Counted from the stretch's first letter, positions 17,142-57,697 are shown. The stretch: 64,000 nt of DNA from Hemiscyllium ocellatum (GCF_020745735.1 NC_083414.1:13144001-13208000), one strand, 5' to 3'. The notes: a model not told the origin generated them from the letters alone. Translations and numbers: made by a program.

Positions 17142-17265
17142 GAAACATTAAAAAATGCTTATACTTAGTGCCTTCCTGGATCTCTCAAAGCACAATGGCT
17201 GTTACATCAGATCTGGCAGTTGTTATAGTTACTGCATGGGCTTATAAATACCAATGATATGAATG

Positions 17266-17420
17266 AGGTAAAAGCAATGACTGCAGATGCTGGAAACCAG
17301 ATTCTGGATTAGTGGTGCTGGAACAGCACAGCAGTTCAGGCAGCATCCGGGGAGCAGATTTTACTGCTCCTCGGATGCTGCCTGAACTGCTGTGCTTTTC
17401 CAGCACCACTAATCCAGAAT
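17266..17420. mobile_element. 155-bp palindromic PLE-derived insertion, 15-bp TSD
   Basis: CCAATGATATGAATG at 17251-17265 and 17421-17435. Arms 17301-17357 and 17364-17420; 35-nt extension 17266-17300. Confidence 0.9.
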
Positions 17421-17486
17421 CCAATGATATGAATGGTAATCTGATAGAATTGGGAATGTTGCAATTTTCTAGTTTTCTTTGGAAAT

Positions 17487-18048
17487 GGTTTGTGCGAAGA
17501 TTTTTAGCTCGGGTGCTCATTGTTGTGGTTCTGTTCGCCGAGCTGGAAGTTTTTGTTGCAAACGTTTCGTCCCCTGGCTAGGCGACATCATCAGTGCTCT
17601 GGAGCCTCCTGCGAAGCGCTTCTTTGATGTTTCTTCCGGTATTTATAGTGGTCTGTCCTTGCCGCTTCCGGGTGTTAGTTTCAGCTGTCCGCTGTAGTGG
17701 TTGGTATATTGGGTCCAGGTCGATGTGTTTGTTGATGGAGTTTGTGGATGAATGCCATGCCTCTAGGAATTCCCTGGCTGTTCTGTCTGGCTTGCCCTAT
17801 GATAGTAGTGTTTTCCCAGTCGAATTCATGTTGCTTGTTGTCTGCGTGTGTGGCTACTAGGGATAGCTGGTCGTGTCGTTTCGTGGCTAGTTGATGTTCA
17901 TGTATGCGGATTGTTAGCTGTCTTCCTGTTTGTCCTATATAGTGTTTTGTGCAGTCCTTGCATGGTATTTTGTAAACTACATTAGTTTTGCTCATGTTGG
18001 GTATCGGGTCCTTTGTTCTAGTGAGTTGTTGTCTGAGCGTGGCTGTTA
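17487..18048 (-). mobile_element. Poseidon-like Penelope 3' fragment (GIY-YIG plus HHR)
   Basis: NVVYKIPCKDCTKHYIGQTGR; HHR motif on the reverse strand at ~17558-17597; probable TSD TTGGAAAT (17479-17486, 18049-18056). Confidence 0.9.
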
Positions 18049-18319
18049 TTGGAAATTATGATGAGATTTTAAAAATCTGTTCAATTAACATATTTCACCC
18101 TCAATTTCACGTGATATCTGAAGAATCAACTCACTCTGTAATGCTGAATGGATGCTAAGTTGTCACTGGTATGGAACTTTTTTTTTGAATGGTATTATCC
18201 TTCCATATTTAAGGGCTAACAAAGTGCTGTTCACTCTGGGATCAATAACTGTTTCGTGGCCTAGTTGTGACAATATCACAGACACTTTTTTAAGTGGCTG
18301 GCAGTAAAGCAAACACAAG

Positions 18320-20150
18320 AAAGTTGCTCCCGTATCACAGCATAAGAAATGGGTTTAGGCCAGCTGGCCCCTCAAGTCTGTCTCTTCACACAACAGCTCC
18401 TCTTTCCTGTCTTTGTAGTAACCTTTATTCAATACGGTTACACCTGATTCATTCTTCTCTCAAACTGCAAGTGATTTCTATCCTATTATGGTCACTGCCC
18501 CCGAGGGGTCCCTTCACCTTCGACTCTAAACAAGTCTGCCTCATTGCATGTTATTAAATCCAGAATTGCCTGTGGTGTAGTGGGCTCTACCACAAGCTGC
18601 TCCAAAAAAAACTTGACATTTTCTTGAGATCCACAACCATCTGATTTTCACAGTCCACTTCAACATTGAAGTCCCCTGTGATAATTGTAATATGTTCTTT
18701 CTTACATGCCTTTCCTACCTGCTAATTTATTTTCTTCCCACCCCCAACCCCAATCCTGTCTACTGTTTGGAGATCCGTACATAACTCCCATTAGAATCTT
18801 TCTTCCATTACAGTTCCTTAACTCTACCCACACAGATTATTTGATTCTGTATCACTTCTTCCTGTCGATTTAATTTCATTTCTTACTAGCAAGGCAACAC
18901 TACCCATTCTGTGCATTTGCTTCTCCTTTGAGAGGTTGTTTATCCTTGGATTCCCTTTCAGCCACATCTGTGATACCTACAACATCATACCCCAACTTCA
19001 ATCTGCATTGTAAGCTTGTTTACTTTGTTTCATATACTGCACGCATTTAAGTACAAATACCCTCAGTCCTGCATTGACTGGCCCCTTTTCATAATCTGCT
19101 GTGCCTGGAATTAGATTCCTGACCCTTTTCTTATCCTTTGTTCCATTATTTATTCTGAAAACTTGAACATCTGAGCAAACCCCCCCCCCCCCCAACTTTT
19201 TCTATAATTTTCCATGCAACTGACCCCCTCCCTCCCCCGATTCTTTTAGTTTAAAGCCCTATCTACAGCCCTACTTATATGATTCTGGTCTCAGCATGAC
19301 TCAAGTAGACCGTGACCCATAGGAACAGTTTTCTTCTTCCCTAGTACTGATGCCAATGTCACATGAATTCAAATTCGTTTCTCCACACCGATCTCTGAGC
19401 CAAGCATTTACCTCTTTTTAATCTTGTTGACCTTGTGCCAGTTTGCTCCTGGCTGACATGGTAATCTGGAGAATATTATCTTATTGGTTTTGCTTTATAA
19501 TTCCTAGCTGCTCATCTTCCCTTGACAGAATCTCTTTCTTTTTTCCTCTTTCTACCCGTATTGTTGATACCTATGTGGACCACAGCAACCGGATCTTGCC
19601 CTCCCCCTCCAAATTCCTCTGCAGCCCAGATGAGATATCCTGAATCCGGACACCACAGTGTTCTGGATTCTCTATTCTGGCCACAGAGAACAGTGTCTAT
19701 TTCCCTGACTCTACTCTCCCTGATTACAACTGAATTTCACTTTTCTCCTCCCTCTTGAATGACTCTCTGTACCATAGTGCTCTGTTCTGCTTGCTCATCC
19801 TTCCTACAGCTCCCACTCTAATTCACAAGGGAGCAAGAGTCTCAAGGGCTGAGGTTCGTTCAGCACTCCTCCTGGATCCCTCTACCTGCCTAACTCATAT
19901 TCACACCCTCCTGGCTCTGACTACTGATCAAACTTGAGGTAGTTAACTTAAGGAGTGTGACTGCCTTCTGAAACACAGCATCCAGATTACTTTTCCTCCA
20001 CCTGATGTGTCGCAATGTTCAAAGCTCAGACTACAACTTGTCAACTCTGAGCCGCGTTCCTCAAGCAACTAGCACTTGCTACAAATGCGGTCACTATAAA
20101 CCACAGTGGGGTCCACCAGCTGCCACATCATGCAGCACATCGCCTTGCCC
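18320..20150 (-). mobile_element. Old degenerate CR1 5'/ORF1-endonuclease region
   Basis: Reverse-strand remnants such as GDFN (GAAGTCCCC ~18668) and N(A)RS-like endonuclease start (~19005); no intact ORF. Boundaries approximate. Confidence 0.55.
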
Positions 20151-20323
20151 AGGTTCTGTCTTTTAGTTTGTAACCTGTAAATATTTGCGCTCTTAACTTC
20201 AATCCCAAAATAACCCATAATAGTCAAATTAGAAGCTATCACCATCCAATGAATTTTTGGTTTACCTGTGATGTCAGTCTATTGTGCTGGGCCTAGATTC
20301 TAAGTAGGGTTTAAATCAACTAG

Positions 20324-20397
20324 CCGAAACATCGATTTTACTGCTCCTCGGATGCTGCCTGAACTGCTGTGCTCTTCCAGCATCACTAATCCAGATT
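20324..20397 (+). mobile_element. Solo short-arm PLE fragment (same family as 17266-17420)
   Basis: CCGAAACATCGATTTTACTGCTCCTCGGATGCTGCCTGAACTG..AATCCAGATT; it ends at the same point as the short arm at 17420. Confidence 0.8.
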
Positions 20398-20409
20398 CTC
20401 AGCTTCAGT

Positions 20410-21090
20410 TGTCATGGTTAAATAAAACTTACAAACTATGAGCCAAAAAAAATCTTGTTCCTCTCTTCACTGAACTCGCATATGGCACCAAATCCCCTGA
20501 ACTATGTACTCACTTATGTTGGGGGCTAGGCCAGATCCTCCTCAAAATATTTCAAGGAAGTAGCCCAGATCCTAACTTTTTCTTATTTTAAAGGCAGCTG
20601 TGAAGTGGATTTTCCAGGGATGGTGCAACTGATCAAATCACTCAGCTTTACGCAAAACAATTTATTTAAACACCACAGTTGAAGCACAAACAAAAGAAAG
20701 CAGAACTTAGAATAATGTAACTATTGGAAATCTTAACTGGCCTGATACAGCGACTATTACTACTTAACTGTTCCAATACTGTAACATCCCATAAACACAC
20801 CGCTTGGCAAAAAGGTAAAGTTAAACACAGATTCTTACAGACTGGAGGGAACAACATCCAGAAAGATATTTCAGAGAAAGTCCGAGGAATCCTTTACTGA
20901 AGCTTGCAATTCTTCTGGACTGGCACATGTTGTGACTGCTACAGCTAAAAAAAAATATTTTTTTTTACCTGGGAGAATTGGTTACTCTCCTTCCATTGTT
21001 AAACTTTTTTTTATATAAAAACTCAAAGGCCTCTTAAACCTAGACTCTGGCACCTCTGCCTTTACAACCTCTCTTGAAAAAAAAACCAAG
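20410..21090 (-). mobile_element. Possible LTR remnant
   Basis: Starts TGTCATG, has a reverse-strand AATAAA-like signal (TTTATT ~20661) and no ORF; truncated by a CR1. Not confirmed. Confidence 0.35.
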
Positions 21091-21091
21091 G

Positions 21092-21913
21092 ACCTCAGAT
21101 TACAATGGGATCTTGATCAGATGGGCAAGTGGGCTGAGAAGTGGCAAATGGAGTTTAATTTAGATAAATGCGAGGTGCAACATTTTAGGAAAGTGAATCT
21201 TAGCAGGTCTTATACACTTAATAGTAAGGTCTTAGGGAGTGTTGCTGAACAAAGAGATCTTGGACTGCAGGTTCATAGCTCCTTGAAAGTGGAGTCGCAG
21301 GTAGATAGGATAGTGAAGAAGACATTTGGTATGCTTTTCTTTATTGGTCAGAATATTGAGTGCAGGAGTTGGGAGGTCATGTTGCGACTGTACAGGACAT
21401 TGGTTAGGTTACTTTTGGAATATTGCGTGCAATTCTGGTCTCCTTCCTATTGGGAAAGATATTGTGAAACTGTTCAGAAAAGATTTACAAGGATGTTGCC
21501 AGGATTGGAGGGTTTGAGCTATAGCAAGAAGTTGAATAGGCTGGGCTGTGGGGTGACCTTATAGAGATTTATAAAATTATGAGGGGCATGGACAGGGTAA
21601 ATAGACAAAGTCTTTTCCCTGGGGAGTCCAGAACTAGAGAGAATAGGTTTAGGGTGAGAGGGGAAAGATATAAAAGAGACCTAAGGGACAACTGTTTCAC
21701 ACAGAGGGTGGTACGTGTATGGAATGAGCTGCCAGAGGAAGTGGTGGAGGCTAGTACAATTGCAACATTTTAAAAGGCATCTGGATGATCTGAATAGGAA
21801 GGGTTTGGAGTGATATGGGCCAAGTGCTAGATTGGGTTGGGATATCTGGTTGGCATGGACAAGTTGGACTGAAGGGTCTGTTTCTGTGCTGTACATCTCT
21901 ATGACTCTATGAC
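21092..21913 (+). mobile_element. CR1/HER1-like LINE 3' fragment
   Basis: WAEKWQMEFNLDKCEV, LYRTLVR.LLEYCVQFWSP; tail CTCTATGACTCTATGA. Confidence 0.92.
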
Positions 21914-22926: not shown

Positions 22927-22984
22927 TCAAGTTCTGATCAGAAGTAGAATCCTGAGAGAAAATGGCAGATATATCCCAAAACAG
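22927..22984 (+). CDS. EMC3: EMC3 exon 2 (58 nt)
   Basis: (S)QVLIRSRILRENGRYIPKQ; TTTTTTTGCAG acceptor, GTGACT donor. Confidence 0.97.
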
Positions 22985-23379
22985 GTGACTCTTAACTTCT
23001 TTACTTAATTTCACAAAAATTACATTTTGGGCCTTGTCAATTAATGCTCAACTCATGTTTAGTTTTGAGCCATTGTCGTTGATTGTTAAATTTAGTAACA
23101 GAAATTTTATTTTGTGAACCATGTGCCATTTTGCAGTCTCAATGGTAGATATCTGGCTTACTGCTCCTCAGTTCTTGATTTATTACTAGGCACAAAGAGG
23201 TCCCAAGATTCAACCTGTTGTTCTTTTTTATGTTCAAATTTTATCCTGAAAAGTATTGGCATCTGTAATAAACTCTCTTGTTTAGTTAAAAAATGAGAAT
23301 ATTCAAATTCTTTTTGCTTTCTAATGGCCTTGTTCTTTTTCAGTTTTTATGTAGAGTATATGATATGCAGGATTTGCCG

Positions 23380-24032: not shown

Positions 24033-24329
24033 TAAGTGCTGTGATATGGCTTGATAGCTGGCAACTGCAATCTGGTAACCTTATCTAAGTTGTCATTCTT
24101 GGTGTGAATATTGAATATTTAATAGGCTGCTTAAGCATCATATTGTTCCTGCTCAGCAGCCAAACGTAGAAACTTGTAGCAGTGGTAACAAGTAAGCCAT
24201 TAAATGCAGGGTCATTCTTATTTTCCAGGTTAATGTGATACTGAGGCCCATCATTACCATAAACTAATTAAGAACAATGGATTGATCTTGGAATCTGACT
24301 GTTGGACGCAAACAGCTGTTCAAAAATAT

Positions 24330-25506
24330 GTTGTGGTTCTGCTCGCCGAGCTGGAAGTTTTTGCTGCAAACGTTTCGTTCCCTGGCTAGGGAACACCATC
24401 AGTGCTGTTGGAGCCTCGTGTGAAGCGCTGCTTTGATGTTTCTTCCGGTATTTATATTGGTTTGTTCTTGCCGCTTCCGGGTGTCAGTTTCAGCTGCAGT
24501 GATTTGTATGTGGGGTCCAGGTCGATGTGTCTGTTGATGGATGTTCTTGCCGTTTCCGGGTGTCAGTTTCAGCTGTAGTGGTTTGTATATGGTGTCCAGA
24601 TCAATGTGTCTGTTGATGGAGTTTGGGGATGAATGCCATGCTTCTAGGAATTCTCTGGCTGTTCTCTGTCTGGCTTGTCCTATGATAGTGGTGTTTTCCC
24701 AGTCAAATTCATGTTGCTGGTTGTCTGAGTGTATGGCTACTAGAGATAGCTGGTCGTGTCGTTTTGTGGCTAGCTGATGTTCATGGATGCGGATTGTTAG
24801 CTGTCTTCCTGTTTGTCCTATATAGTGTCCTATATAGCGACCTTTAGGACTCATAACAGCACACAAGCCAACATCCACGCTCAGACAACAACTCACTAGA
24901 ACAAAGGACCCAATACCCAGCATGAGCCAAACTAACGTAGTTTACAAAATACCATGCAAGGACTGCACAAAACACTATATAGGACAAACAGGAAGACAGC
25001 TACCAATCCGCATCCATGAACATCAGCTAGCCACAAAACGACACGACCAGCTATCTCTAGTAGCCATACACTCAGACAACCAGCAACATGAATTTGACTG
25101 GGAAAACACCACTATCATAGGACAAGCCAGACAGAGAACAGCCAGAGAATTCCTAGAAGCATGGCATTCATCCCCAAACTCCATCAACAGACACATTGAC
25201 CTGGACACCATATACAAACCACTACAGCTGAAACTGACACCCGGAAACGGCAAGAACATCCATCAACAGACACATCGACCTGGACCCCACATACAAATCA
25301 CTGCAGCTGAAACTGACACCCGGAAGCGGCAAGAACAAACCAATATAAATACCGGAAGAAACATCAAAGCAGCGCTTCACACGAGGCTCCAACAGCACTG
25401 ATGATGTTCCCTAGCCAGGGAACGAAACGTTTGCAGCAAAAACTTCCAGCTCGGCGAGCAGAACCACAACAACGGATACCCGAGCTACAAATCTTCAATC
25501 AGATTT
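24330..25506. mobile_element. Head-to-head palindromic Poseidon-like Penelope insertion, 13-bp TSD
   Basis: TGTTCAAAAATAT at 24317-24329 and 25507-25519. Arms 24330-24828 and 24972-25470 (499 bp each); 36-nt tail 25471-25506. GIY-YIG ORF at 24922-25401. Confidence 0.93.
25395..25434 (+). ncRNA. Minimal type I hammerhead ribozyme motif (PLE-associated)
   Basis: GCA-CTGATGA-T-GTTCCCT-AGCC-AGGGAAC-GAAA-CG-TT-TGC: intact core, 7-bp stem II, 3-bp stem I, palindromic stem III (AACGTT). Confidence 0.75.
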
Positions 25507-25996
25507 TGTTCAAAAATATCAAAGCAAAACCAATCCTCTTCTCACTTAGTGGCCATACATGCAACATCCTCAATGTGGTTGCACTGATTGCCAAAGCCAC
25601 AAAGACCACATGCTCACCTTATTCTTTTTAAGATGTGTTGAGCAGTAGGCCACTGGAAGATACTTAAAATGTATTACGGATACCCTTGTACAATTAGCTT
25701 CTCCCCACATCTTTCCCCCCTCCCCCACTCCCAAAAAAAAACTGTAGGGCCTTCCCTGAATAGTTCAGATAAATTTGGTTTTTACTGAAAGGTTTCATTT
25801 TCAGGATAAACCAAAGTAATGATTTTATGTAATCAATCCAAGTACCAGATCTGGATTGAAACACGATACCTTAATATTGTATTCAAATTTCTGTGTAGGT
25901 TGGATTCTTGCTATATATTTCTAATGAGCAGTTTTTGCTTTTCTCGTGTACTTACAGTCTACACTTTGACCTGACTCTCTCTCTTTAAATTTCCAG

Positions 25997-28395: not shown

Positions 28396-28436
28396 GATGA
28401 GACTAAAGCGTATTAACTCCCATTTCATGTTTTCAG

Positions 28437-35462: not shown

Positions 35463-35498
35463 GTTCCTGATGAAGGGCTTATGCCCGAAACGTCGAAT
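35463..35498 (+). ncRNA. Minimal type I hammerhead motif within an ~80-bp solo PLE fragment (35463-35542)
   Basis: GTTC-CTGATGA-A-GGGC-TTAT-GCCC-GAAA-CG-TC-GAAT: intact core, GUC triplet, 4-bp stems I and II. Confidence 0.8.
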
Positions 35499-36363
35499 TT
35501 CCTATTCCTTGGATGCTGCCTAACCTGCTATGCTTTAACCACCAACCAACCATTTTCACCTGCAAGGCTTTGGTTTGCCCTCTGAGTTTGCTAATCTGGG
35601 TTATTAGTCATTGTGTTTGTATGCCTCACTGGGGTAGTACCTTATAAATAAAATCCTGTTCCACCTGGAATCATTACAAAATTTAAAGATTTTGCCTGTC
35701 ACTTTGAAAGCAAGGATCAAGTTTCTGTACTTTAAGAATTAGTATTTAATACAAAATAAATTCTAACAATGATAAACAATTATGTCTTGCCAACTTATAA
35801 CTTTACTAGTTAAAACTCTAACCCCTCTGCATACACACAAATGTACAGGCAGGCACAGAAACACTTGGGTGTTATGCGAAGACTGGGAAGGCAGTTTCCT
35901 GAGATGACTCTTTGCTGATTGGAATGCTGCTTGTTTTTTGATCTTCATTTTTAGTACTTTCACTTGTTTGCAAGAGGCATAGGATAAGTGGTTTGTGCTT
36001 ATAAATTAAAAGTCTCAACTGACAGCAACTGATGAGCAGAAATAAACTGGCTATCTCAAGCATAAAATGCTTTTAACTGCAGAGCAAGCTCAGCTCCTTC
36101 CTTTCTAGAGATCTGATAACTTCTGTCCAAACTGTTCATCTGTATTGGAGCCAATCACAGTTATTGGCTGGTAGGATGTCTTATCCTCAATAACTCTTCA
36201 CCGTTTTACAGACCAATCAATTACTTGTTGCTGGCTAAATCTCAACCTCTAAGTCTCCAGCTCAGTTGTAGCTAAGTTTCACTGCTTGAACTAAATGCTG
36301 TGTAAACGGCACTTACTTATAATGAGGGCCATGTAACGTCTTTTGAAAATGTTCAGGAATACT

Positions 36364-36700: not shown

Positions 36701-37381
36701 ATTTTTTTGAATCCTTGGTTTTTAAAACCATTATTTTTTTCATTTCAGAAAAAAGAAATGTAAAGCGGTACAGATTTTACAGTACAAATCCACATCTAAA
36801 CTCAAACGGAAAAGTTAGGCAGGGTTCAAGCTGGAAAAGTCATAAATGTTGTGAGAACGCCTCTGGACGTTGCAGTATCCCCCTGGTCTATGATCATAGT
36901 CAGCAAATGTTTAGTCTGTATGATTTTTGCCAACAAGTTAGTGGATTGAGGAAGAGGGAAAATTGGGTGAAAATGAATATTTGATTATGTAACTGGTGCT
37001 TTTAATGTAATCGAATTGGAATATTCTAAAAGAGTGGTGTAATTATTGGCTACATAATGATCAAACTCCTATTTCATAAGTAGTATATTTCCAACCTCAG
37101 TAAGTGCATCCAGATTTAGGAGTGGAAAATAAGATGGAAAACTTGCGACTCGGTCAACAACCAGTAGTATCTAGCATCAATATTTTGGCATGATCAAAGT
37201 ATTTCTCCCGTTGGGCAGGAAGTGCTGCATTGGTGATGAGGGTGTAATTGTATCAGAAGGGGAAATAATAATGCAGCCTGTAAACTTCAAGGTTTGTGCG
37301 AAGATTTGTAGCTCGGGTGCTCGTTGTTGTAGTTCTGTTCGCCGAGCTGGAAGTTTTTGTTGCAAACACTTCGTCCCCTGG

Positions 37382-39325
37382 CTAGGAGACATCATCAGTG
37401 CTCTGGAGCCTCCTGCGAAGCGCTTCTTTGATGTTTCTTCCGGTATTTATAGTGGTCTGTCCTTGTCGCTTCCGGGTGTCAGTTTCAGCTGTCCGCTGTA
37501 GTGGTTGGTATATTGGGTCCAGGTCGATGTGTTTGTTGATGGAGTCTGTGGATGAATGCCATGCCTCTAGGAATTCCCTGGCTGTTCTCTGTCTGGCTTG
37601 CCCTATGATAGTAGTGTTTTCCCAGTCAAATTCATGTTGCTTGTTGTCTGAGTGTGTGGCTACTAGGGATAGATGGTCGTGTCGTTTCGTGGCTAGTTGA
37701 TGTTCATGTATGCGGATTGTTAGCTGTCTTCCTGTTTGTCCTATATAGTGTTTTGTGCAGTCCTTGCATGGTATTTTGTAAACTACATTAGTTTTGCTCA
37801 TGTTAGGTATTGGCTCCTTTGTTCTAGTAAGTTGTTGTCTGAGCGTGGCTGTTGGTTTGTGTGCCGTTATGAGTCCTAAGGGTCGCAGTAGTCTGGCTGT
37901 CAGTTCTGAAACACTCCTGATGTATGGTAGTGTGGCTAGTCCTTTTGGTTGTGGCATGTCCTCGTTCCGTGGTCTATCTCTTAGGCATCTGTTGATAAAG
38001 TTGCGCGGGTATCCGTTTTTGGCGAATACCTTGTATAGGTGTTCCTCTTCCTCTTTTCGCAGTTCTGGTGTACTGCAGTGTGTTTAGCTCTTTTGAATAG
38101 TGTCCTGATGCAGCTTCGTTTGTGTGTGTTGGAGTGGTTACTTTCATAGTTTAGGACTTGGTCTGTGTGTTTTCCTGTGTACCCTTGTGGTGAATTCTCC
38201 GTTCGGTGTTCTCTGTACTATCACATCTAGGAATGGGAGTTGGCTATCCTTTTCTTCTTCTCTCGTGAATCGGATTCCTGTGAGTGTGGCGTTGATGATC
38301 CGGTGTGTTTTTTCTATTTCCGTGTTTTTGATGATTCCAAACATGTCATCGACATATCTGACCCAGAGTTTGGGTTGAATTTGTGGTAGGGCTGTTTGTT
38401 CTAACCTTTGCATAACTGCCTCTGCTATGAGTCCCGAGATTGGTGATCCCATGGGTGTTCCGTTGATTTGTTCGTATATCTGATTGTTGAATGTAAAGTG
38501 TGTAGTGAGGCACAAGTCCAGTAGTTTAAGTATGCCGTCTTTGTTGATAGGTTCAGCCTCCTGTTTTCTGTTCTGTATGTCCAGTAGGTTGGCTATTGTT
38601 TCTCTGGCTAGGGTTTTGTCAATTGAAGTGAACAGTGCCGTCACGTCGTATGAGATCATGGTTTCTTCTTTGTCTATGTGTGTATTCCTGATGGCGTCCA
38701 AGAATTCCTGTGTTGATTGTATGGAGTGTTTGGATCCGCTGACCAGGTGTTTCAGTTTCTGTTGTAGTTCTTCGGCCAGTTTGTATGCTGGTGTCCCTGG
38801 TAGTGATACTATGGGTCTGAGTGGGATGTCTGGTTTGTGTACTTTGGGTAGTCCATAGAATCTGGGGGTGTTGTTACTTTCCGGTTTCATTCTTCGTAGG
38901 TCAGCTTTGGTTATCTGTCCGTTTTTTTGTAGATTCCTTAGTGTGTTATTTATTCTATTAGTGAGTTGTGGTGTGGGGTCAGAATCCTTCATTTGGTAGG
39001 TGTTTGTATCTGCGAGTAGTTGCTGTGCTTTTTTGATGTAATCTGATTTATCTAGGATGACAGTCATTCTGCCTTTATCTGCTGGTAGTATGATTATGTT
39101 CTTATCATTTCTTAGTGCTTTCAGTGCTTCCCTCTCCTTGGTGTTGAGGTTATGTGTTTGTCTTTTTCTTATCATCATAGGTATGACCGTTTGTCTCACT
39201 GTTTGTTCTGTCTCTTCAGTCAGTCCATTGTTCCTGAGTGTGCATTCTAGTGCTGCTAGGAAGTCTGCTGTCTTGGCATCCCTGTGGTTGTAGTTGAGTC
39301 CCTTGGCCAGTATAGTTCTTTCCAT
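37382..39325 (-). pseudogene. Penelope RT plus GIY-YIG ORF, frameshifted (minus arm)
   Basis: ILPADKG, FYGLPKVHK, SYDVTALFTSI, GTPMGSPIS, RYVDD, LPFLDV, then VVYKIPCKDC..YIGQT. Broken near 38085-38170. Confidence 0.9.
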
Positions 39326-39580
39326 GTCTGTGAGCTGTCTGTGGGAGAGGTTTTTAACCCAGGTGTGTGTTGTAGTGTCCTCTTTTTTTGTGTGTTAGTT
39401 TGGCCATTTTTTCTTTTAGTGCCGTTTTTTTTGCGATGTGTTGTCCTGTTCTGTCCTATAGTGACAGCCTGTTCTATGGTCCGGGTCCATTCATGATTAG
39501 TGGTCTTTGAAATTAACGACTTTTGGCGCGCAATTTCTTGTTTGTATTTGTGCAGTCAGTTGTGAGCATCTGTGATCAGG

Positions 39581-40734
39581 CTTAAACTACTGGACTTGTG
39601 CCTCACTACACACTTTACATTCAACAATCAGATATACGAACAAATCAACGGAACACCCATGGGATCACCAATCTCGGGACTCATAGCAGAGGCAGTTATG
39701 CAAAGGTTAGAACAAACAGCCCTACCACAAATTCAACCCAAACTCTGGGTCAGATATGTCGATGACACGTTCGGAATCATCAGAAACACGGAAATAGAAA
39801 AAACACACCGGATCATCAACGCCACACTCACAGGAATCCGATTCACGAGAGAAGAAGAAAAGGATAGCCAACTCCCATTCCTAGACGTGATAGTACAGAG
39901 AACACCGAACGGAGAATTCACCACAAGGGTACACAGGAAAACAACACACACAGACCAAATCCTAAACTATGAAAGTAACCACCCCAACACACGTAAACAA
40001 AGCTGCATCAGGACACTATTCAAAAGAGCTACAACACACTGCAGTACACCAGAACTGCGAAAAGAGGAAGAGGAACACCTATACAAGGTATTCGCCAAAA
40101 ACAGATACCCGCGCAACTTTATCAACAGATGCCTAAGAGATAGACCACGGAACGAGGACATGCCACAACCAAAAGGACTAGCCACACTACCATACATCAG
40201 GAGCGTTTCAGAACTGACAGCCAGACTACTGCGACCCTTAGGACTCATAACGGCACACAAACCAACAGCCACGCTCAGACAACAACTTACTAGAACAAAG
40301 GAGCCAATACCTAACATGAGCAAAACTAATGTAGTTTACAAAATACCATGCAAGGACTGCACAAAACACTATATAGGACAACAGGAAGACAGCTAACAAT
40401 CCGCATACATGAACATCAACTAGCCATGAAACAACACGACCAGCTATCCCTAGTAGCCACACACTCAGACAACAAGCAACATGAATTTGACTGGGAAAAC
40501 ACTACTATCATAGGGCGAGCCAGACAGAGAACAGCCAGGGAATTCCTAGAGGCATGGCATTCATCCACAGACTCCATCAACAAACACATCGACCTGGACC
40601 CAATATACCAACCACTACAGCGGACAGCTGAAACTGACACCCGGAAGCGGCAAGGACAGACCACTATAAATACCGGAAGAAACATCAAAGAAGCGCTTCG
40701 CAGGAGGCTCCAGAGCACTGATGATGTCTCCTAG
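39581..40734 (+). pseudogene. Penelope RT C-terminus plus GIY-YIG, 5'-truncated and frameshifted (plus arm)
   Basis: ORFs 39572-40396 and 40348-40734 are near-identical to the minus arm. Confidence 0.9.
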
Positions 40735-41397
40735 CCAGGGGACGAAATGTTTGCAACAAAAACTTCCAGCTCGGCGAACAGAACCACAACAGCCTGTAAA
40801 CTGTACTACAAAATTTTGTGGTTGTGTTCAACAGCTTCAACATTATAACTTTAACCTTGAGTACAACTCATAGTTGTATAAAAATGTTAAGAAATGTAGA
40901 GTATCAGTCTTTCTTCACTCCAGTGTAGAAGCAGGTTATTCAGCCCATCGGGTCACACTTGACTGTCCAAAGAGCAGCCCACCTTAAGCTATCCCTGTAA
41001 CTGCGAATTTCCCGTAGTTAATCCACCCAACCTGCAAATCCCTGGATATCGCGGGCAATTTAGCATGGCCAGACAACTTAACGTAATCTTTGTTTATATG
41101 TTGGATATAGTTTGGTGACGTGGGTTGAAAATTAATTGTAGTTTTAAGTCATTTGCTTACACAAATGCCCAGTTTTTTAAAATCTCTTTAGTTGCAAGAA
41201 ATGAATTAATTTTGAAAGCATCTTATTAATTTGTGGTATTCATTGTACATGAAGAATAAAGCACACTTGTACAAAGAATATTGCTGTATGTATGCTTCTA
41301 CAATTAATGGGGTGAAACTGAAACATAATATTTGCACAATAAACCTAGAAATGGCTTAATCTGTTTTTCTGTCCCACTTTGACATGGAATCCAGTGA

Positions 41398-41569: not shown

Positions 41570-42700
41570 GACTGTTGATTTGGCAAATAAAGTACAATGT
41601 GGGAAATGTGAAAATATCCACATTGGCAGTAAGAATAAAGTTGTAAATGGTGAGAGTTTGCAAAGCTCTGAGATACACAGAAATTTGGGTGTTCTCATAC
41701 ATGAATTATGAACATTATTCTGCAGGTGCAGCAAGTAATTAGTAAGACTAATAGGAGTTTATACACTCAGACCTCATTATTTGTGAGAGATAGGCACACA
41801 GACTCTTTGGATAACAAATCTCCTGTGTACTGTGAAAGACTATTCAAAGAATTAGATGAGACAGTCAGAAAAACTTAAGATGGAGTCTGGGACTGAATTT
41901 GCAAGCACACAGATCCATACGTAGCATATCATTATGAGGACAAAGTAATTAATTACAAGGGAAGGTGAATATAAAAGTAGGGTTTTTCCTTCAGCTACAC
42001 CAGATGTTATTCTGGAATACTGTGTATAGTATTGGTGTCTTTAGTAAGGAAGGATGAAAATGTATTGGAAGCAGGTCAGAGAAGGTTTACTTGATAAATA
42101 CCTGGAATGGACAGGCTGCCTAATGAGAAAAAGTTGGACAGCAAGGGTTGTATCTGCTGGAGATTAGAAGAGCAAGAGGCAACCTGATTGAATCATACAA
42201 ACCCTGAGAGGTCATGACAGGATGGGATTGAAAAGGATTTTTCCACTTGAGAGATTCAACAATTAGGAGTTACTGGATGTAGGTTTGCTCGCTGAGTTGG
42301 AAGGTTCATTTCCAGATGTTTTGTCACCATACTTGGTAACATTTCCCAAAGAAACTCAAACATATAAATTGAAAGCAGGAATTTTCAGCATTGCTTTGCC
42401 TGACCCCCACTGAAGATGTTACCTAGTAGGGTAACGAAACATCTGGAAATGAACCTTCCAGCTCAGCGAGCAAACCTACATCCAAAACCTCAACCTGAGC
42501 TACAAATCTTCTCAAAACCCGATTAGGAGTTACTGTTTAAAAATAAAGGTTATTCATTTACAATATTTTGCTCTGATGCTCCTAAGTGTTTAAAATCCTG
42601 CTTTTGTTTGCAGATATAGTATTGATGTGTAAGGGATTGAAAGCTATCATGGATTGGTGGGAATGTGGGATAACCAGATTAGCCATCAAGGCCAGAATGC
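41570..42700 (+). mobile_element. Old CR1 fragment hosting the 42276 insertion
   Basis: KCENIHIG, LEYCV.YW and LEAGQRRFT remnants. Confidence 0.65.
42276..42521. mobile_element. 246-bp palindromic PLE-end insertion, 14-bp TSD
   Basis: ATTAGGAGTTACTG at 42262-42275 and 42522-42535. Arms ~42274-42342 and ~42416-42484; 37-nt tail; HHR motif CTGAAGA-T-GTTACC-TAGTAG-GGTAAC-GAAA-CA-TC at ~42410-42443. Confidence 0.88.
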
Positions 42701-48680: not shown

Positions 48681-50370
48681 TACAAAAATAGGTTAAAATT
48701 TTCAAAAATTAATGCATGTGGACCTTCCTCCAGTCTAACTCTGATAAATCCAAACTGAACATTCTTGGATCTGGAAGGAATTTGTTAGTGGTTAAATGTA
48801 AATTTTAAACTCATCCAGGTGAATGTTTTCTCAAGTTTGAAGGTAGAAGTGGTGATTTAATCTGCTCAAGTACAGATAAACGCTATATTTGTGACCAATT
48901 AAGAATGGCCACAAAAGCAATGTACAAGAGGACAGCTAGTGTACGTTAGCAAACGTCAGCACCTTCAAAAGAGGGGAAGGTTTTTGATTGTGTACAGACC
49001 TGTTACTTAAGCACACTCCAGTTTTCTCTGTCTAAGATGTGCTTTTGGTGTGAAAAAGCAACTGCTGTTACAATAACTAATTGACAAGATTTTCAAATGA
49101 TGACAAGAACACCCTGCTTTGCAAATATATTGTTAAGCTTACATATGCTTTACAAAAGGCCTTCATAAATATAGAAGATGTGAAAATCTGTAAAAACTAG
49201 ATGGTTGAATGTGCAATGTGATGAATGTAACTGATCCTTCTATGAACTGCTGATATTATTCATTCTCTGGTTTGCAACTAAAAAATGTCATTTTTATATA
49301 ACTCGAGAAAAAAAACACTCATTTAAGATCCTGTCCTCAGATACTGTTATTTTGCAGACAAAAATGAACAGTTTTGTATGAGATCTTATTTTCAATATCT
49401 GTGTTTAATAAAGATTTTGAGTAAGAACACTAAGTGTAGCACAATTATTTGTGATGTCAAGATGAGAAGTTATGAGGTTTTATTGCCTGAGAGCAAGAAA
49501 AATTCCCTTGAGCCGATCAAATCTGTGCCGATCAGGCACCTAGCTATCCTAATCCCAATTTCCAGCACTTGGCCCATAAGCCTTGAATGTTTTGACATCA
49601 CAGTGTACACATAAATGCTATTAAAATGTTATAAGGGTTTCTGCCTCTACCTCCCTTCAGACCAGTAAACAGTTGAAATAACAAAAAATCATGTGGCACA
49701 GTGATAGTGTCCCTGCTCCAGGTCCAGTAAGCCTGGGTCCAAGTCCCACCTGCTCCAGAAGTGTATTCACAGAGAATCCCTCTGTGAATATTTTTTTCCA
49801 CACCTCTCTAAACCTCCAGCCCCTTAATTTAAATCTATGCCCCTGGTCATTGATCCCTCTAACAAGGGAAAAAGTTCCTTCCTCTGACTATCCTATCTAA
49901 ATATCCCTCTTAATTTTTTGTACATCTCAATCATGTTCCCCCACCCAAATTTCCGTAAAATTGATACATGTTTAAACATAAAAATTGTAGTATTTGTATT
50001 ATGCATCATGTTAGTTTACTGGCAATCTTTTGTTAAATCAAAGTTGTGGATATGCTGATGGGAGTCAGCTCAATCCTGGCCTCGCATATATATCCACATG
50101 TTGAAAACCAGCTGAGGTAAGTAGATGAGTTCGTGATAGTCCCTTGGGAGCATAATGCTATTAGTTTTTTTTAGTTGTTTGTGTTTACTCCGGTATCAGG
50201 GTTAAAGGGATCGTGCCAATGTGTTTATTTGGAAATATCCACAATTCTAGGCATCTGAACTTTAGAGAAAATTCTCCACAGTCCATTGTCAACAACTAGA
50301 ATGCTTTTCTCAAGTTGACAAACATCACTCCGGATTCTGGTGTTCTGCTCTGTACTTTTCCTAAATGTCA

Positions 50371-50577
50371 AGTGTGGTGCTGGAAAAGCACAGCAGGTCA
50401 GGCAGCATCCGAGGAGCAGGAGAATCAATGTTTCGGGCATAAGCCCTTCATCAGACTATACCCTCATTCCTGATGAAGGGCTTATGCCTGCAAAGTCAAT
50501 TCTCCTGCTCCTCGGATGCTGACTGACCTGCTGTGCTTTTCCAGCAACACACACTCAACTCTGATCTCCAGTATCTG
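50371..50577. mobile_element. Palindromic HHR-bearing PLE-end pair
   Basis: Arms ~50371-50454 and ~50470-50553, both starting at CTGATGA; tail on the right arm; no clear TSD. Confidence 0.8.
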
Positions 50578-51396
50578 AGATCTGGAACTAAAGCAAAGTA
50601 TTGGAGAAACTCAGCAGGTCTGGCAACATTTGTGGGGAGAAATCAGTGTTAGCGTTTTGACTCCAGTGGCTCTTCATCAGACCTTAGTGATGAAGTGAAA
50701 ATAACCTTGATGTTCTGTTATAAATCTGAAAATCACATCAGTTTTCTGAGATTTGTTTTGTAACAGTTAAGATTAAGTTACGTTAACTGCTGCTATGACA
50801 AAAGATTTGATGTTAAATGAATATCTTTTTAAACAGCTAGGTCCTGCAAATAGCAATGAGATGGCTGTTAATTCGTTTCTAATAATATTAGGGTCAGTCA
50901 GCTCCAGGTTTTTTTTTTGAATAATGCAATAGGATCTTTCACTCTTAAAAACATTTCCGAAGGACAGCACAATGTACCTGCCTGTACCTCCAAATTACAA
51001 GATTAATCTGCAACCTTCTGACTTGAAGGTAAGGATACAATTGTTTAGCAGCATTGGGGTATGAGAGAAAAATGAGAAAATAATTTTGAAAAAATGGACT
51101 TTCTGCCATTAGTTAAATCACAAATCTTTCAACTCCTGCTACTGGTCTCAAATGTTGCAAAAGCTAACTTATTCATAAGGTTGCCATTGCTAGTGAATTT
51201 AGCGGTGTTGCTGAAGAAAAGCCACATTTTGCCAAGCACTCAAGACCATTCATAAAAATACTGGGGGAGAAACAACCTTTTGTACCTCATGAAAGAAGAA
51301 TGCTGAGTGGTAAGCAAGTGGACGGTGGGAAAGCTTTTGCCAATACACATTAATGATGTTTGTCGATTAATTGTCAGGCTTTAAAGTTTTAACCAG

Positions 51397-51590
51397 GAGA
51401 AAGTGAGGATTGCAGATGCTATGGATCAGAATCTAGCATGGAATGCTGGAAAAGCACAGTAGGTCAGGCAGCATCTGAGGAGCAGGAGAATCGATGTTTT
51501 GGGGAAGAACTCTTCATCAGCAATGAGCCAAGGGAATGGAGAGATAAGTGGGAGGGGGAGGTGAGGCTGAGGGGAAGATAGCTGAGAGTG
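51397..51590 (-). mobile_element. Neptune-like PLE 3' end with decayed HHR
   Basis: Same sequence family as 3470 and 12153. Confidence 0.7.
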
Positions 51591-53253: not shown

Positions 53254-53747
53254 AATAATACATACAAAATACCCTGCAAGGACTGTAACAAACACTACAT
53301 CAGACAGGCAGGAAACCAGCCACCAGGATACACAAGTACCAACAAGCCATCAAACTACATGACCAACTATCCCTAGTATCCTTACACATAGACAAAGACG
53401 GACACCACTTCAACTGGGACAATACATCCATCCTCGGACAGGCTAAACAAAGACACGCACAGGAATTCCTAGAAGCCTGACATTCAAACCAGAACTCTGT
53501 CAATAAACACATTAATTTGGACCCCATTTACCAACCTGTGAGAAAAAGAACCAGTAATGATATCACCCACCATAACAGACCAAGAGACACAAATAGAAAG
53601 CAGGACAGAACACCAGCGCTTCACCGCAGACTCGCTGATGATGTTACCTAGCATGGTGACGAAACAGCCGAGAACAAACCTACCGGCTCAGTGAGCAAAC
53701 TTACAACCTGAACCTCAACCTGAGCTACAAATCATCTCAAAAATCGC
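53254..53747 (+). mobile_element. Older Poseidon-like Penelope 3' fragment
   Basis: YKIPCKDCNKHYIRQAG; HHR-like CTGATGA-T-GTTACC-TAGCAT-GGTGAC-GAAA at 53635 with a mutated cleavage triplet; same tail as 42485-42521. Confidence 0.85.
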
Positions 53748-56700
53748 AACTTTGGACTATATTCAGACTGGGCTTATTTTGATCTGACTGAAGTTTGAGG
53801 GATTGTGACAAAGTTGATGTGGAAAAGATCTCTTGTTGGTGAGCCTCGAACTACAGGCATTGTTTTAAGATTAGGCTTAGTGCTTTCAGGACAGATGAGA
53901 ATTTATTTTCTTTTAGAAGACTATGCAAATTTGGAACTCTCTTTACCTTAGAAGGCAGTGGAGAGAGAGTATTGACATAATTGTCAAGTGGACGTAGATT
54001 CTTATTAAGCAAGAAAAGCAAAAGTTATTGGGGATAGACTGAAATGTGGAATTAAGAGCAATAACAACAGGTCAGCCATCCTAGAATGGCAAAGCAGGCT
54101 TCAAGGGACAAAAGATCCATTTCTGCTCCTAATTCATAACTTTGTATGAAAACTAAAATCCATTTTGCTCCACTTTAGAAGCTAACTTCCCAAATAATAG
54201 TGTATTATGAGCCTTCAGTACAATGGAAAGTGCTACTACCCCAGATTATTTGTACGATTGAGCAGATTAGCCATTTCAAATGACATAAATAATGTGGCCC
54301 AGAAAAGGCAAGAACATTCATTGAACCAGTTGAGGTTTTCTGACATGTACATTTCTTGTTCAAGTTTCAAAGTTGCCAGTTTTCTTGAATTTAGTTACAT
54401 AAACATTGTATAACCTTGTGTATACCATATTTGGAATAGTGTAAACAGTTACAATGTATATATCAAGGATATAAAGAAACTGTAAGTGTGCAAAAGGAAA
54501 CTAAATTGCGAGTAGGACTGGGGCTAAGACTGTCTGGAAATAAAAAATTAGTAGAGCTCTTTGATTTATAGAACATCACAAAATAAGTTAATTGATGGCA
54601 CCTATTGAGATTTTCTCTGGAAACCTTTGATTTTTGGGGTCTACTTTTCTGTTTTGGGAGGATGACCTTTTCGTTCTATCTCCTCATTTGTTGGCTGATG
54701 CAGTCACTTAATATTACATTTCTTTTTTGTATTGACACGTGGAGTATTTGGACTCAAACAGAAGAATTCACCAATAATCTTAATCATAAACTTTCCATTA
54801 AACAGATGGCTAGAACACAAGGAAAACATTAATTTCATGGAGAGAGTATTTCAATTGGTACAAGGTAACATAAAATGTTAAAGGATTAACATTTGTTCTG
54901 TTGACATGTAAGAAATTGGATGTCCCGGGGCTTGTGTTTTTCTGTCTTGCAGACAGGATGTGACAATCTGATCATACTCTATAAATGCTGCAGTATAAGG
55001 AATAACCCAATCTCTCACTGTTTTAAGGAATAACCTAATCACTTTACATTGTTTTTGGGTGGTATGTAACTATGGGGGAGTGATAGGGGGTTGTGTCTTG
55101 CGTGCATGACTGACTGTGATGTAAAACCCTGTCTCAAGGGAGGATGGTTCCCTTGTTCAGGGATCTTTGCGATGTTTGTGGAGCATGTCAAACAAAGAGT
55201 GTTAAGTGATCTTCCAAAACCTGGTACTTAAATAAATTGTGGCTGTTCACAGAAGTTGGGAGTATTGCAGTTGAATCAAGTGGGTAGGAATCTCAAGAAG
55301 GAAACCTCACAAACGGGCATAAGTTATAAACAAAAGCTTCCCCCTCCCCTGCAGCCTCTCTCCCATGCCCCTCCCCAAACCACTTTGTCATTTTCTCTCC
55401 TGTATTACCCATGATCCCAATCAGCATAAATCTTGTAGCCTCCTTCTATATTCCCAAATAGCTCTTCCCCCAGCAGATAGAACTTCCAGCTTCAGCTGAA
55501 AGTGGTCCCCGATCCCAATGTTGGCTGGAGGCAGCCTCAAATCTCTGCCTCAGCAAAAAACCCCTTGGCCTTAAGGCTCCATTGGCATTTAATTTTCTAA
55601 TTCTTCCATTCACAGGTTGCTTTTTCTCCACCTTTGCTGATAGGCTTGCCACTAAAGCAGGACTTTTCAAAGTAGCGGTCATGAGCTGAAATTTTAGTCA
55701 TGCATTCTGATGCTATACTGGTTACTGTGGAAGCCTTGACAGGGTTATAACAGCTGCACTCCTGTTCCAACAGACACTGATCTCAGAGGGTTACAACAAA
55801 TTTTAAATCTCAAAAATAGGTGGCCTCCCAGTCTGACAGGATGAATTCCCAGCCTGGCGGGGTAGATTTGCAGTCTGGTGTGACATTCTTTAGGCCAGAA
55901 GTGGTGGTGTTTTGGTATGTGGCAGTCTTTCAGCCCTGTGTGGACATCACTTTCCTGGTGATTAAATGGTAATATGCATGGATTTGCAAGGTGTTTCCTC
56001 AGCCTTTAGAGTATTCAGACAGGACATGAGCAAAAGGAGTAAAAGAGAGAAACTCTGGGCTATGACTGGAACAACCCTGAGGGAAAGTTTGGCAGTGGGC
56101 TTTGGAGGAGGAAGGGAAGCAGTTAATTATGATTTTCATCTTTATCCAGGTTGTCACACAGCATGTATTGAACTTATCCTGTCTTATGTATGGAGAAGGT
56201 CCAAATTTAATTTACTAGGGTCAATAACTACAGGGAACAGGGAAGTTGATTGTTGCAAACAGTAAACTCAAAATAGTAATACTTCCTATTGTCAGCAAAC
56301 AGAAGTGGTAAAATGGCCTGTTGAAACAAAAAACTGAGCCATGTCATGTCTGTACTGTCCAGGCCTGGTTAGAACATGAAGTTATGTTCCCCACATAAAC
56401 CTCACTGTCACATAGCAGCAAATGTCTGTATTCAACAAAACTATATATGGATGCAACCAAATAAGATATGCGACTCACTCAATGTGTTCATCAGCCATAA
56501 CTAGAGTCACAAGCAGTCCTTGGAAATTTCTTATGATTAAGCTTCCCTTGTATCGAGTCAACAATATGACCTACATCAGAGGCTCACCTTCCAGATACTG
56601 TGCTACTTCCTTTGGAAGTTTGCACTCCATTAACACAGAAGTTCCTCAAGATCTTTATTTAACAGGGCATTTGCTTGTTTTAAGCACCCCCTTCCACACA

Positions 56701-57167
56701 TGGCACCTTGCACACATGTAAAATACCCTGAGATGTTATTTTACAGCAATATAAATTGTAAACTATTTTTACTACCAGAATAGTTTGATTAAAGTAACAG
56801 ATTACATAGAAGACTAGAAACAAAGTACAAAGTGCTGAAAATTTCAGAGCAGTTGATGTCAGCAGCTGACAGAAAAAGGTAGGTGAATGTATTGAAAAAG
56901 ATCCCTTCACTCGAACTCTTGAAAGCTGTGAGATCAATTTAAATTATCAGCCAAGGAAGAACTTAATCACAATTTTCTCTCAGGAAAAGTACGTTTAAGC
57001 TTGGCATATGAGCTTTGACAAGTTGTCTGTCAAATTTAACAGGAAAGAGTTGTTAAAAAATCAGAAGTGTCTCCTTGACTAGTTGACTGCAACTCTGATG
57101 GCGCACTAAGAAGCTTAAACAGCTTCCAGGTCAAATCAGCCTGCTTGATTGACACTCACCGACTACC

Positions 57168-57391
57168 GAGTAAAAAGTGAGGTCTGTAGATGCTGGAGAT
57201 CAGAGCTGAAAATGTGTTGCTGGTTAAAGCACAGCAGGTTAGGCAGCATCCAAGGAACAGGAAATTCGACGTTTCGGGCCAGAGCCCTTCATCAGGAATC
57301 CTGATGAAGGGCTCTGGCCCGAAACGTCGAATTTCCTGTTCCTTGGATGCTGCCTAACCTGCTGTGCTTTAACCAGCAACACATTTTCAGT
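57168..57391. mobile_element. 224-bp insertion containing a perfect 92-bp palindrome of two back-to-back hammerhead units
   Basis: Arms 57206-57297 and 57299-57390 are exact reverse complements with a 1-nt spacer. 38-nt tail; TSD ACTCACC(G/C)ACTACC at 57154-57167 and 57392-57405. Confidence 0.93.
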
Positions 57392-57697
57392 ACTCACCCA
57401 CTACCTTAAACATTCACTTTCTCCACCTGCAAATACACAGTCACAGCAGTGTATAACATCTACAACTTGCATTATCACCAACCAGTCTTGACAACAGCTT
57501 CCAATCTTGCAAACTCCAAGGACATTTTGGATAGAAGATCTGTAGGAGATGACCACTTGCAAGCCTCGAGCCTCCAATACCATCCTGACTATTTCGCCAT
57601 TCCTTTTACTGGGTTGAAATCATGAATCCTTACTTCATTATCGCATTGTGCACCTTGATAACAGTAAAGTCTCCAGTGGCCAATAAGGCAACTCACC

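What the first reader, a model, noticed from the sequence alone, without database searches (positions are those of the whole stretch)
17251..57405. Recurrent asymmetric palindromic insertions: hammerhead-bearing PLEs integrate as head-to-head pairs with a fixed 35-39 nt overhang
Seen: five independent insertions (17266-17420, 24330-25506, 37287-40789, 42276-42521, 57168-57391; 155 bp to 3.5 kb) share one design. Two copies of the element 3' end point outward, and the pair sits inside ONE 13-15 bp TSD. One arm carries a terminal tail of 35, 36, 39, 37 or 38 nt that the other lacks. The short-arm endpoint is nucleotide-precise within a family (..GAACCACAAC at 24330 and 40790; ..CACATTTTCA at 57389 and 9138; ..AATCCAGA(A/T)T at 17420 and 20397). 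This holds for Poseidon-like and Neptune-like families whose ends are not obviously similar. Established: PLEs are known to form inverted pseudo-LTR structures with short tails and to carry minimal HHRs. Inference: each event uses two defined priming points, the RNA 3' end and an internal site ~37 nt upstream, on the two strands of one staggered cut. That would be a conserved two-ended integration mechanism recorded repeatedly in this genome.
Basis: partly seen in the sequence, partly recalled or inferred. Interest (0 to 1): 0.85.

Follow-up and report, generated by a model that had tools for sequence, protein, structure and literature searches.

The report
Penelope retroelement head-to-head insertions with tails
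Five (probably six) insertions in this shark sequence really are back-to-back copies of Penelope-like retroelement ends inside one target duplication, with a 34-40 base "tail" on one arm only; this is the textbook insertion signature of these elements, and its two-start-site mechanism was shown in vitro in 2024.

Summary
All five insertions sit at the stated coordinates between 13-15 bp target-site duplications. Their arms are 89-100% complementary, both 3' ends point outward, and only one arm carries a 34-40 nt tail. An unbiased inverted-repeat scan added a sixth, older pair with the same polarity and found no tail/tail or no-tail/no-tail pair. A contig from a related species joins window 57153 directly to 57392, a precise empty site for the 224-bp palindrome. 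Family B encodes an RT plus a GIY-YIG endonuclease of Penelope/Poseidon type. Family A is a 90-130 nt non-coding mini-element. Minimal hammerhead motifs number 8 against 0.04 expected, but insertion 1 has none. Inverted pseudo-LTRs with a 30-40 bp tail on one end are described for PLEs (Arkhipova 2013; Craig 2021). Frangieh et al. 2024 showed that a Poseidon protein cuts and extends both strands and starts reverse transcription at two adjacent internal sites that bracket the tail. First readers of this scan noted the same architecture in several other windows of this genome. Possibly new: strict one-tail-per-pair asymmetry.

The parts
17251..17265 (.). Insertion 1, left copy of the 15-bp TSD CCAATGATATGAATG (right copy 17421-17435)
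17266..17357 (-). Insertion 1, tailed arm (family A, antisense on +). Tail is 17266-17300, 34-35 nt. No hammerhead.
17358..17420 (+). Insertion 1, tail-less arm. It is 6 nt (ATTTTA) longer at the centre than the tailed arm's body.
24330..24828 (-). Insertion 2, tail-less arm (family B, 499 nt, GIY-YIG ORF end). TSD TGTTCAAAAATAT at 24317-24329 and 25507-25519.
24829..24837 (.). Insertion 2, 9-nt filler at the arm junction that repeats the adjacent CCTATATAG
24838..25506 (+). Insertion 2, tailed arm (669 nt). Hammerhead at 25398-25427; tail 25471-25506 (35-36 nt). Both arms share a private ~79-bp tandem duplication.
37287..39580 (-). Insertion 3, tailed arm (2294 nt). Contains the RT ORF 38144-39325 and the GIY-YIG ORF 37385-38080; tail 37287-37326 (38-40 nt). 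TSD CAGCCTGTAAACT at 37274-37286 and 40790-40802.
39581..40789 (+). Insertion 3, tail-less arm (1209 nt). Hammerhead at 40718-47. The junction with the other arm has no filler and no microhomology.
42276..42345 (-). Insertion 4, tail-less arm (70 nt, starts inside hammerhead helix II). TSD ATTAGGAGTTACTG at 42262-42275 and 42522-42535.
42346..42521 (+). Insertion 4, tailed arm (176 nt). Hammerhead at 42410-42439; tail 42483-42521 (37-39 nt).
57168..57298 (-). Insertion 5, tailed arm (family A mini-element). Hammerhead at 57295-57272; tail 57168-57204 (37-38 nt). TSD ACTCACC(G/C)ACTACC at 57154-57167 and 57392-57405.
57299..57391 (+). Insertion 5, tail-less arm, 100% complementary to the other arm. 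The whole insert plus one TSD copy is absent from a related species' contig.
50369..50577 (.). Sixth, older head-to-head pair. Antisense tail-less arm 50369-50454; sense arm 50467-50577 with about 20 nt of tail. A third antisense copy (50578-50683) abuts it. No TSD found.
9138..9227 (-). Single tail-less family A unit (90 nt) with its own 12-bp TSD (9126-9137 / 9228-9239). It defines the short endpoint independently of any pair.
61147..61276 (-). Single tailed family A unit (130 nt) with a 14-bp TSD (61133-61146 / 61277-61290)
17487..18048 (-). Single tailed family B copy (562 nt, 97% identical to insertion 3) with a weak 8-bp TSD

Best explanation
These are ordinary integration products of endonuclease-bearing Penelope-like elements (PLEs). 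One family is a Penelope/Poseidon-type autonomous element; the other is its short hammerhead-bearing non-coding relative.

The element's RT-endonuclease makes nicks 13-15 bp apart on the two strands. Each 3'-OH then primes reverse transcription of element RNA. One end starts at the distal start site and carries the tail. The other starts at the proximal site 34-40 nt upstream and lacks it.

The two antisense cDNAs grow towards each other and are joined head-to-head. Joining occurs by an end-to-end template jump or by end joining, with 0-9 nt of filler. The result is an asymmetric palindrome inside a single TSD.

Shown here: the architecture, the TSDs, the same-template origin of the arms, one empty site, and single copies that end at either site. 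Inferred, and supported by the published in vitro work: that both ends are RT start sites, that both are internal to a tandem transcript, and how the arms are joined.
For: All five pairs have exact or near-exact 13-15 bp TSDs and outward-pointing 3' ends.

The arms of a pair are far more alike than different insertions of the same family: 100%, 99%, 98-99% and 97% within pairs, against 87-91% between insertions 2 and 3. Both arms of insertion 2 also share a private ~79-bp duplication.

A 666-nt contig from a related species joins 57153 to 57392. It lacks exactly the insert plus one TSD copy and shows no one-arm state. Contigs from another sample of the same species cross both outer junctions of insertions 3 and 5.

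Single copies with their own TSDs end at the short site (9138-9227) or the long site (61147-61276, 12153-12292). Both ends are therefore stand-alone termini. Hundreds of genomic contigs diverge into unrelated AT-rich flanks around the tailed termini, at 37286 and 57174.

RT, a GIY-YIG with two Cys between GIY and YIG, and minimal hammerheads (8 found, 0.04 expected) identify the elements as PLEs.

Literature: a 31-bp tail on one of the inverted pLTRs, with the inverted pLTR 37 bp shorter (PMC3846280). A 30-40 bp tail often at only one end (PMC8557442). Both strands cleaved and extended, with two adjacent internal RT start sites that bracket the tail (PMC11167929).

In both families a conserved stem encloses an AC-rich loop that holds the proximal site. 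This resembles the AC-rich stem-loop of PAc.
Against: No direct evidence here that the short end is an initiation site rather than a processing site.

In vitro, both start sites were used on both strands without preference. The strict one-tail-per-pair pattern is therefore not explained by the published data.

Three of the six pairs have almost equal arm bodies. For insertion 1 this is not explained by a defined RNA 5' end.

The palindrome centres are not confirmed by independent reads, because Logan contigs break there.

Only one empty site was obtained.
Confidence: 0.72

Rival explanations
1. Snap-back (self-priming) synthesis. A single cDNA folds back on itself and is copied, which makes the second arm. 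The element endonuclease, which recognises the tail, then resolves the intermediate so that one arm loses the tail.
For: Arkhipova 2013 inferred self-priming from palindromes at inverted junctions. Craig 2021 attributed the tail to EN-mediated resolution. Near-equal arms with tiny spacers (1, 6 and 13-15 nt) occur in insertions 5 and 1 and in the 50.4-kb pair. In the three family B pairs the tailed arm is the longer one.
Against: There is no microhomology at the insertion 3 junction, which a fold-back 1050 nt away would need. In insertion 1 the 6 extra central bases belong to the tail-less arm, not to the presumed first cDNA. Trimming a tail that lies between the arm and the TSD should also remove the TSD, yet the TSDs are intact. 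Tail-less single copies with their own TSD show the short end exists without any fold-back. The equal arms of the mini-elements are explained by a defined 5' end that single copies share.
Confidence: 0.12
2. Two sequential, independent insertions. A second copy later landed next to or inside the 5' end of the first, in the opposite orientation.
For: PLE endonucleases are reported to target their own sequences. The 50.4-kb locus is a composite of three abutting copies.
Against: Each pair is flanked by a single TSD, with no second TSD at the centre. Arm identity within pairs is far above between-copy identity, and the arms of insertion 2 share a private duplication. The empty site in the related species lacks both arms at once. 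Six of six pairs have the same tail polarity.
Confidence: 0.04
3. Assembly artefact. The palindromes come from chimeric long reads or mis-joined repeats.
For: PLE tandem and inverted structures are known to trouble assemblies. Independent contigs do not span the palindrome centres.
Against: Artefactual palindromes would not be framed by exact TSDs, and their arms would not differ by a family-specific 34-40 nt tail. The outer junctions of insertions 3 and 5 are present in another sample. The empty site matches the TSD boundaries to the base. The same design is described in flies, rotifers and lizards.
Confidence: 0.02

Closest known systems
PAc, the Poseidon element of Anolis carolinensis (Frangieh et al. 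2024, PMC11167929)
   Same: RT plus a C-terminal GIY-YIG. The ORF starts at the hammerhead (here an ATG inside CUGAUGAUG, with the predicted cut about 28-31 nt downstream; 26 nt in PAc). Two termini lie about 35-40 nt apart, roughly 70 and 106-110 nt into the ORF (111-118 in PAc). An AC-rich loop sits at the proximal site. Both target strands are used. Flanks are AT-rich.
   Different: Nothing biochemical was tested here. In vitro, PAc showed no strand preference between the two start sites. Every natural pair here has exactly one tailed arm.
Pen2a_Av and other Penelope families of Adineta vaga; Penelope of Drosophila virilis (Arkhipova et al. 2013, PMC3846280)
   Same: Inverted pLTR next to the direct copy. 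A single 8-10 bp TSD around the whole unit. A 31-bp tail on one inverted pLTR, with the inverted copy 37 bp shorter. The tail codes for N-terminal residues of the ORF.
   Different: The shark pairs are mostly bare head-to-head 5'-truncated arms without a full ORF-pLTR unit. TSDs are longer (13-15 bp). Many events involve 90-130 nt non-coding mini-elements.
L1 twin priming
   Same: Both strands of the staggered target cut prime cDNA synthesis, which gives an inverted structure inside one TSD.
   Different: In twin priming one RNA is copied from its poly(A) end and from an internal site. The two halves are therefore different parts of the element (inversion without duplication). Here both arms contain the same 3' region, and the offset is a fixed 34-40 nt.
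Minimal hammerheads of PLEs and non-LTR retrozymes (Cervera and de la Pena 2014, PMC4209133; Li et al. 2026 preprint, 10.64898/2026.07.22.740005)
   Same: [quoted passage not shown] Dual motifs on opposite strands 100-700 bp apart were already noted. Short non-autonomous PLE derivatives are known.
   Different: Rfam hammerhead models do not detect these motifs. Activity was not tested.

Membership tests
Penelope-like elements, EN+ (canonical) | Reverse transcriptase domain | tested here: met
   RVT_1 at E 4e-9 on ORF 38144-39325(-) and E 3e-6 on 39572-40396(+). The YVDD-type motif RYVDDMF is seen in the translation. PLE-specific RT motifs (DKG etc.) were not examined.
Penelope-like elements, EN+ (canonical) | C-terminal GIY-YIG endonuclease with the two cysteines of the CCHH motif between GIY and YIG | tested here: met
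   VVYKIPCKDCTKHYIGQTGRQL lies downstream of the RT in the same frame. Pfam GIY-YIG hits are below threshold at the right place in two copies (E 0.013-0.02). The criterion is from PMC8557442.
Penelope-like elements, EN+ (canonical) | Minimal type I hammerhead motif in the pLTR region | tested here: met
   A descriptor scan found 8 motifs, all inside the elements, against 0.04 in shuffles. Helix II covaries. No Rfam hit. Self-cleavage is not testable here.
Penelope-like elements, EN+ (canonical) | Inverted/tandem pLTR arrangement with an optional 30-40 bp tail at one end and variable-length TSDs | tested here: met
   Five clean pairs, tails of 34-40 nt, TSDs of 13-15 bp. Single copies have TSDs of 10-14 bp.
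Penelope/Poseidon clade (versus Neptune/Nematis) | No CX2-5CxxC zinc-finger-like linker upstream of GIY-YIG | tested here: met
   The roughly 90 residues before VVYKIPC contain a single cysteine. No RT phylogeny was made, so the clade assignment is provisional.
   The motif is absent from the only coding family. Family A has no ORF in the window, so its autonomous partner cannot be assigned.
Two-start-site, two-strand TPRT (PAc mechanism) | RT initiation at two adjacent internal RNA sites; cleavage and extension of both strands | not testable with these tools
   Only the genomic footprint can be read. Two discrete termini about 37 nt apart occur in pairs and in single copies. The tail is open N-terminal coding sequence.

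The most novel reading that the evidence does not exclude
The two start sites are not alternatives chosen at random. They are used once each in a single coordinated event, so a head-to-head pair always has exactly one tailed arm.

One way this could work is that the two RT protomers load on the same RNA at the distal and proximal sites and travel in tandem. That would also explain three other observations. Both arms come from one template. The tailed (trailing) arm is as long as or longer than the tail-less (leading) arm. In insertion 1 the tailed arm stops 6 nt short of the other.

Evidence here is thin. Six of six pairs are asymmetric, while single copies are roughly half tailed (chance about 0.01-0.03). 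The tailed arm is longer in three of three pairs with unequal arms. Four of five tail-less junctions show 1-2 nt of microhomology (chance about 0.016).
Probability: 0.3. Interest if true: 0.55.

Novelty: already known. Interest (0 to 1): 0.25.

Why it matters
The window gives clean, young natural examples of the PLE insertion signature in a shark: one has a 100% palindrome and one has a demonstrated empty site. They agree closely with the only in vitro study of a PLE. That is useful as confirmation and for repeat annotation, since these palindromes can be mistaken for miRNA-like hairpins, as the sub-threshold Rfam hits on them show.

It does not reveal a new mechanism. The one aspect that could add knowledge is quantitative: whether pairs always combine one tailed and one tail-less arm. 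If so, the two strands' reactions would be coupled, which the in vitro data did not show.

Tried and rejected
Rfam at gathering and at E<=10 gave no hammerhead family. It returned only generic miRNA-hairpin matches on the palindromes, all below their gathering scores. The hammerhead was therefore checked with a descriptor and shuffles.

I tried to collect an unbiased set of further loci by taking homologues of the EN ORF and fetching their contigs.

For insertion 3, the related species' contig stops inside the TSD, and the joints table was swamped by repeat-derived joints. No empty site could be read there.

Eight other long ORFs in the window were scanned for a second PLE lineage. None was found; the only hit was an LTR-element integrase fragment.

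Sequential insertion and assembly artefact were considered and rejected, for the reasons given under the rival explanations.

The copy at 20323-20399 may carry a degenerate tail. It was not counted as firm support for a shared short endpoint.
Full report
**What is there.** All five insertions exist as described. The inverted-repeat search gave arms of 58 nt (97%), 500 nt (99%), about 1.2 kb in four collinear blocks (93-99%), 76 nt (89%) and 92 nt (100%). Each insert is framed by a direct repeat of 15, 13, 13, 14 and 14 bp; four are exact and the last has one mismatch. I aligned the outer ends of the two arms in sense orientation. One arm extends 34-35, 35-36, 38-40, 37-39 and 37-38 nt beyond the other. 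The ranges reflect 1-2 bases at the short junction that could belong to either the element or the target.

**What the elements are.** Two groups are present.

- *Family B (insertions 2, 3 and 4).* It encodes a reverse transcriptase (RVT_1, E 4e-9). In the same frame follows a GIY-YIG nuclease reading VVYKIPCKDCTKHYIGQTGR (Pfam GIY-YIG below threshold at the right place in two copies).
  - The two cysteines between GIY and YIG are the PLE hallmark. The CX2-5CxxC linker that marks Neptune and Nematis is absent, which points to the Penelope/Poseidon type (criteria from PMC8557442).
  - The nearest database proteins come from orectolobiform sharks: Hemiscyllium ocellatum at 94% and Chiloscyllium punctatum at 86-89%.
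- *Family A (insertions 1 and 5).* It is a non-coding unit of about 90 nt without the tail and about 130 nt with it. Most single copies begin at the same point, TTCCTGATGA. In an independent run, 168 contigs diverge from the window at that point.

A descriptor for the minimal PLE hammerhead was CUGANGA, an optional bulged base, a 4-7 bp helix II, then GAAA. It found 8 motifs, all inside these elements, against 0.04 in shuffles. Rfam models do not see them. Insertion 1 is cut downstream of the motif and has none.

**Orientation and origin of the arms.** In insertions 2 and 3 the coding order RT->EN->hammerhead->tail runs leftwards in the left arm and rightwards in the right arm. Both 3' ends therefore face the TSDs. 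Arms of one pair are much more alike than different insertions of the same family: 98-100% against 87-91%. Both arms of insertion 2 also carry the same private ~79-bp tandem duplication. The two arms of a pair therefore come from one template source.

**Arm junctions.**

- Insertion 3: 2294 nt meets 1209 nt with no filler and no microhomology.
- Insertion 2: a 9-nt filler repeats adjacent sequence.
- Insertion 4: 176 nt meets 70 nt.
- Insertion 1: the 6 central bases belong to the tail-less arm.
- Insertion 5: both arms are complete mini-units.

**One event or two?** A 666-nt contig from a related species, about 95% identical in the flanks, runs from window 57153 straight to 57392. It lacks exactly the 224-bp palindrome plus one TSD copy. 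Contigs from another sample of the same species cross both outer junctions of insertions 3 and 5. There is no second TSD at any centre. Sequential insertion and assembly artefact are therefore unlikely. The palindrome centres themselves are not independently confirmed.

**Are the ends defined sites?** Single copies with their own TSDs end at the short site (9138-9227, 12-bp TSD). Others end at the long site (61147-61276, 14-bp TSD; 12153-12292, 10-bp TSD). Hundreds of contigs diverge into unrelated AT-rich flanks around the tailed termini, at 37286 and 57174. Within a family the short endpoints agree to within 1-2 nt, not strictly to the base. The 20399 example is doubtful.

In family B, an ORF starts at the ATG inside the hammerhead box and stays open through the tail. 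Its peptide is conserved between diverged subfamilies (MM.PSQGTK..LPARRAEPQQR.PELQIF). The tail is thus N-terminal coding sequence, and the long end is most likely internal to a tandem transcript rather than the RNA 3' end.

Both families also show a conserved stem whose 3' strand lies in the tail and whose AC-rich loop contains the proximal site. One compensatory change supports it in family B.

**Comparison with what is known.**

- Arkhipova et al. 2013 describe an inverted pLTR completing the insert within one TSD. One of the inverted pLTRs carries a characteristic 31-bp tail, and the inverted copy is 37 bp shorter.
- Craig et al. 2021 draw the 30-40 bp tail as often present at only one end.
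- Frangieh et al. 2024 purified the Anolis Poseidon protein. It cleaves and extends both strands. Reverse transcription starts at two adjacent internal sites in an AC-rich stem-loop, and the tail is the sequence between them.
- Cervera and de la Pena 2014 already noted paired minimal hammerheads on opposite strands 100-700 bp apart.

First readers of this scan noted the same design in several other windows of this genome. Those notes are unchecked, and I did not examine those windows.

**What might be new.** An unbiased inverted-repeat scan of the whole window recovered the five pairs plus one older composite at 50369-50577. It found no pair with two tails or none. Single copies are roughly half tailed. 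Six of six asymmetric pairs is therefore unlikely under independent choice, at about 0.01-0.03. In vitro, no strand preference was seen.

The tailed arm is the longer one in all three pairs with unequal arms. Four of five tail-less junctions show 1-2 nt of target/template microhomology, with chance about 0.016. These hints fit a coupled reaction, possibly two RTs following each other on one RNA. With n=6 this is a hypothesis, not a result.

**Verdict.** It is the known insertion signature of Penelope-like elements, and its mechanism has already been shown experimentally. Interest is low to moderate.

Noticed in passing
window 25448-25489, 42460-42504, 57215-57282 (minus strand) and equivalents: In both PLE families a conserved stem (B: AGCUCGG/CCGAGCU, with one compensatory G-C to A-U change; A: GGAUGCUG/CAGCAUCU) encloses an AC-rich loop that holds the tail-less endpoint. 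The 3' strand of the stem lies inside the tail, so tail-less copies lack half of it.
   Followed up: partly
window 17420/17421, 24329/24330, 40789/40790, 42275/42276: At four of five tail-less junctions, 1-2 bases could belong to either the target or the template (chance about 0.016). This is a hint of minimal primer-template pairing at the proximal site.
   Followed up: partly
window 50369-50683: Three abutting family A copies: antisense tail-less, sense with about 20 nt of tail, then antisense tail-less joined 3'-to-3' to that tail. No TSD could be found. Contigs of an independent run also show rare 3'-to-3' joints (57390 joined to 57204).
   Followed up: partly
window 3471-3597, 9138-9227, 12153-12292, 35464-35561, 51397-51523, 61147-61276: Family A mini-elements mostly share a defined 5' end at TTCCTGATGA. 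This lies about 30 nt upstream of the predicted hammerhead cleavage site, so the 5' end is not the ribozyme cut. What sets it is unexplained.
   Followed up: partly
window 24829-24837: A 9-nt filler at the centre of insertion 2 repeats the adjacent CCTATATAG, which contains the palindrome CTATATAG. This looks like a template slip or templated end-joining insertion.
   Followed up: no
window 37385-38080 (protein search): After the shark homologues, the next-best matches to the EN region are trematode proteins (Clonorchis, Schistosoma, Trichobilharzia; 45-55% identity) rather than proteins from other vertebrates.
   Followed up: no
window 60525-61067: ORF fragment with the integrase zinc-binding domain (Integrase_H2C2, E 2e-18), from an LTR retrotransposon unrelated to the finding.
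   Followed up: no
window 17320-17400 and 57265-57331: The PLE palindromes score as miRNA precursor hairpins in Rfam below gathering thresholds (mir-2756, mir-2432, mir-1597). This is a likely source of false miRNA calls in such genomes.
   Followed up: no
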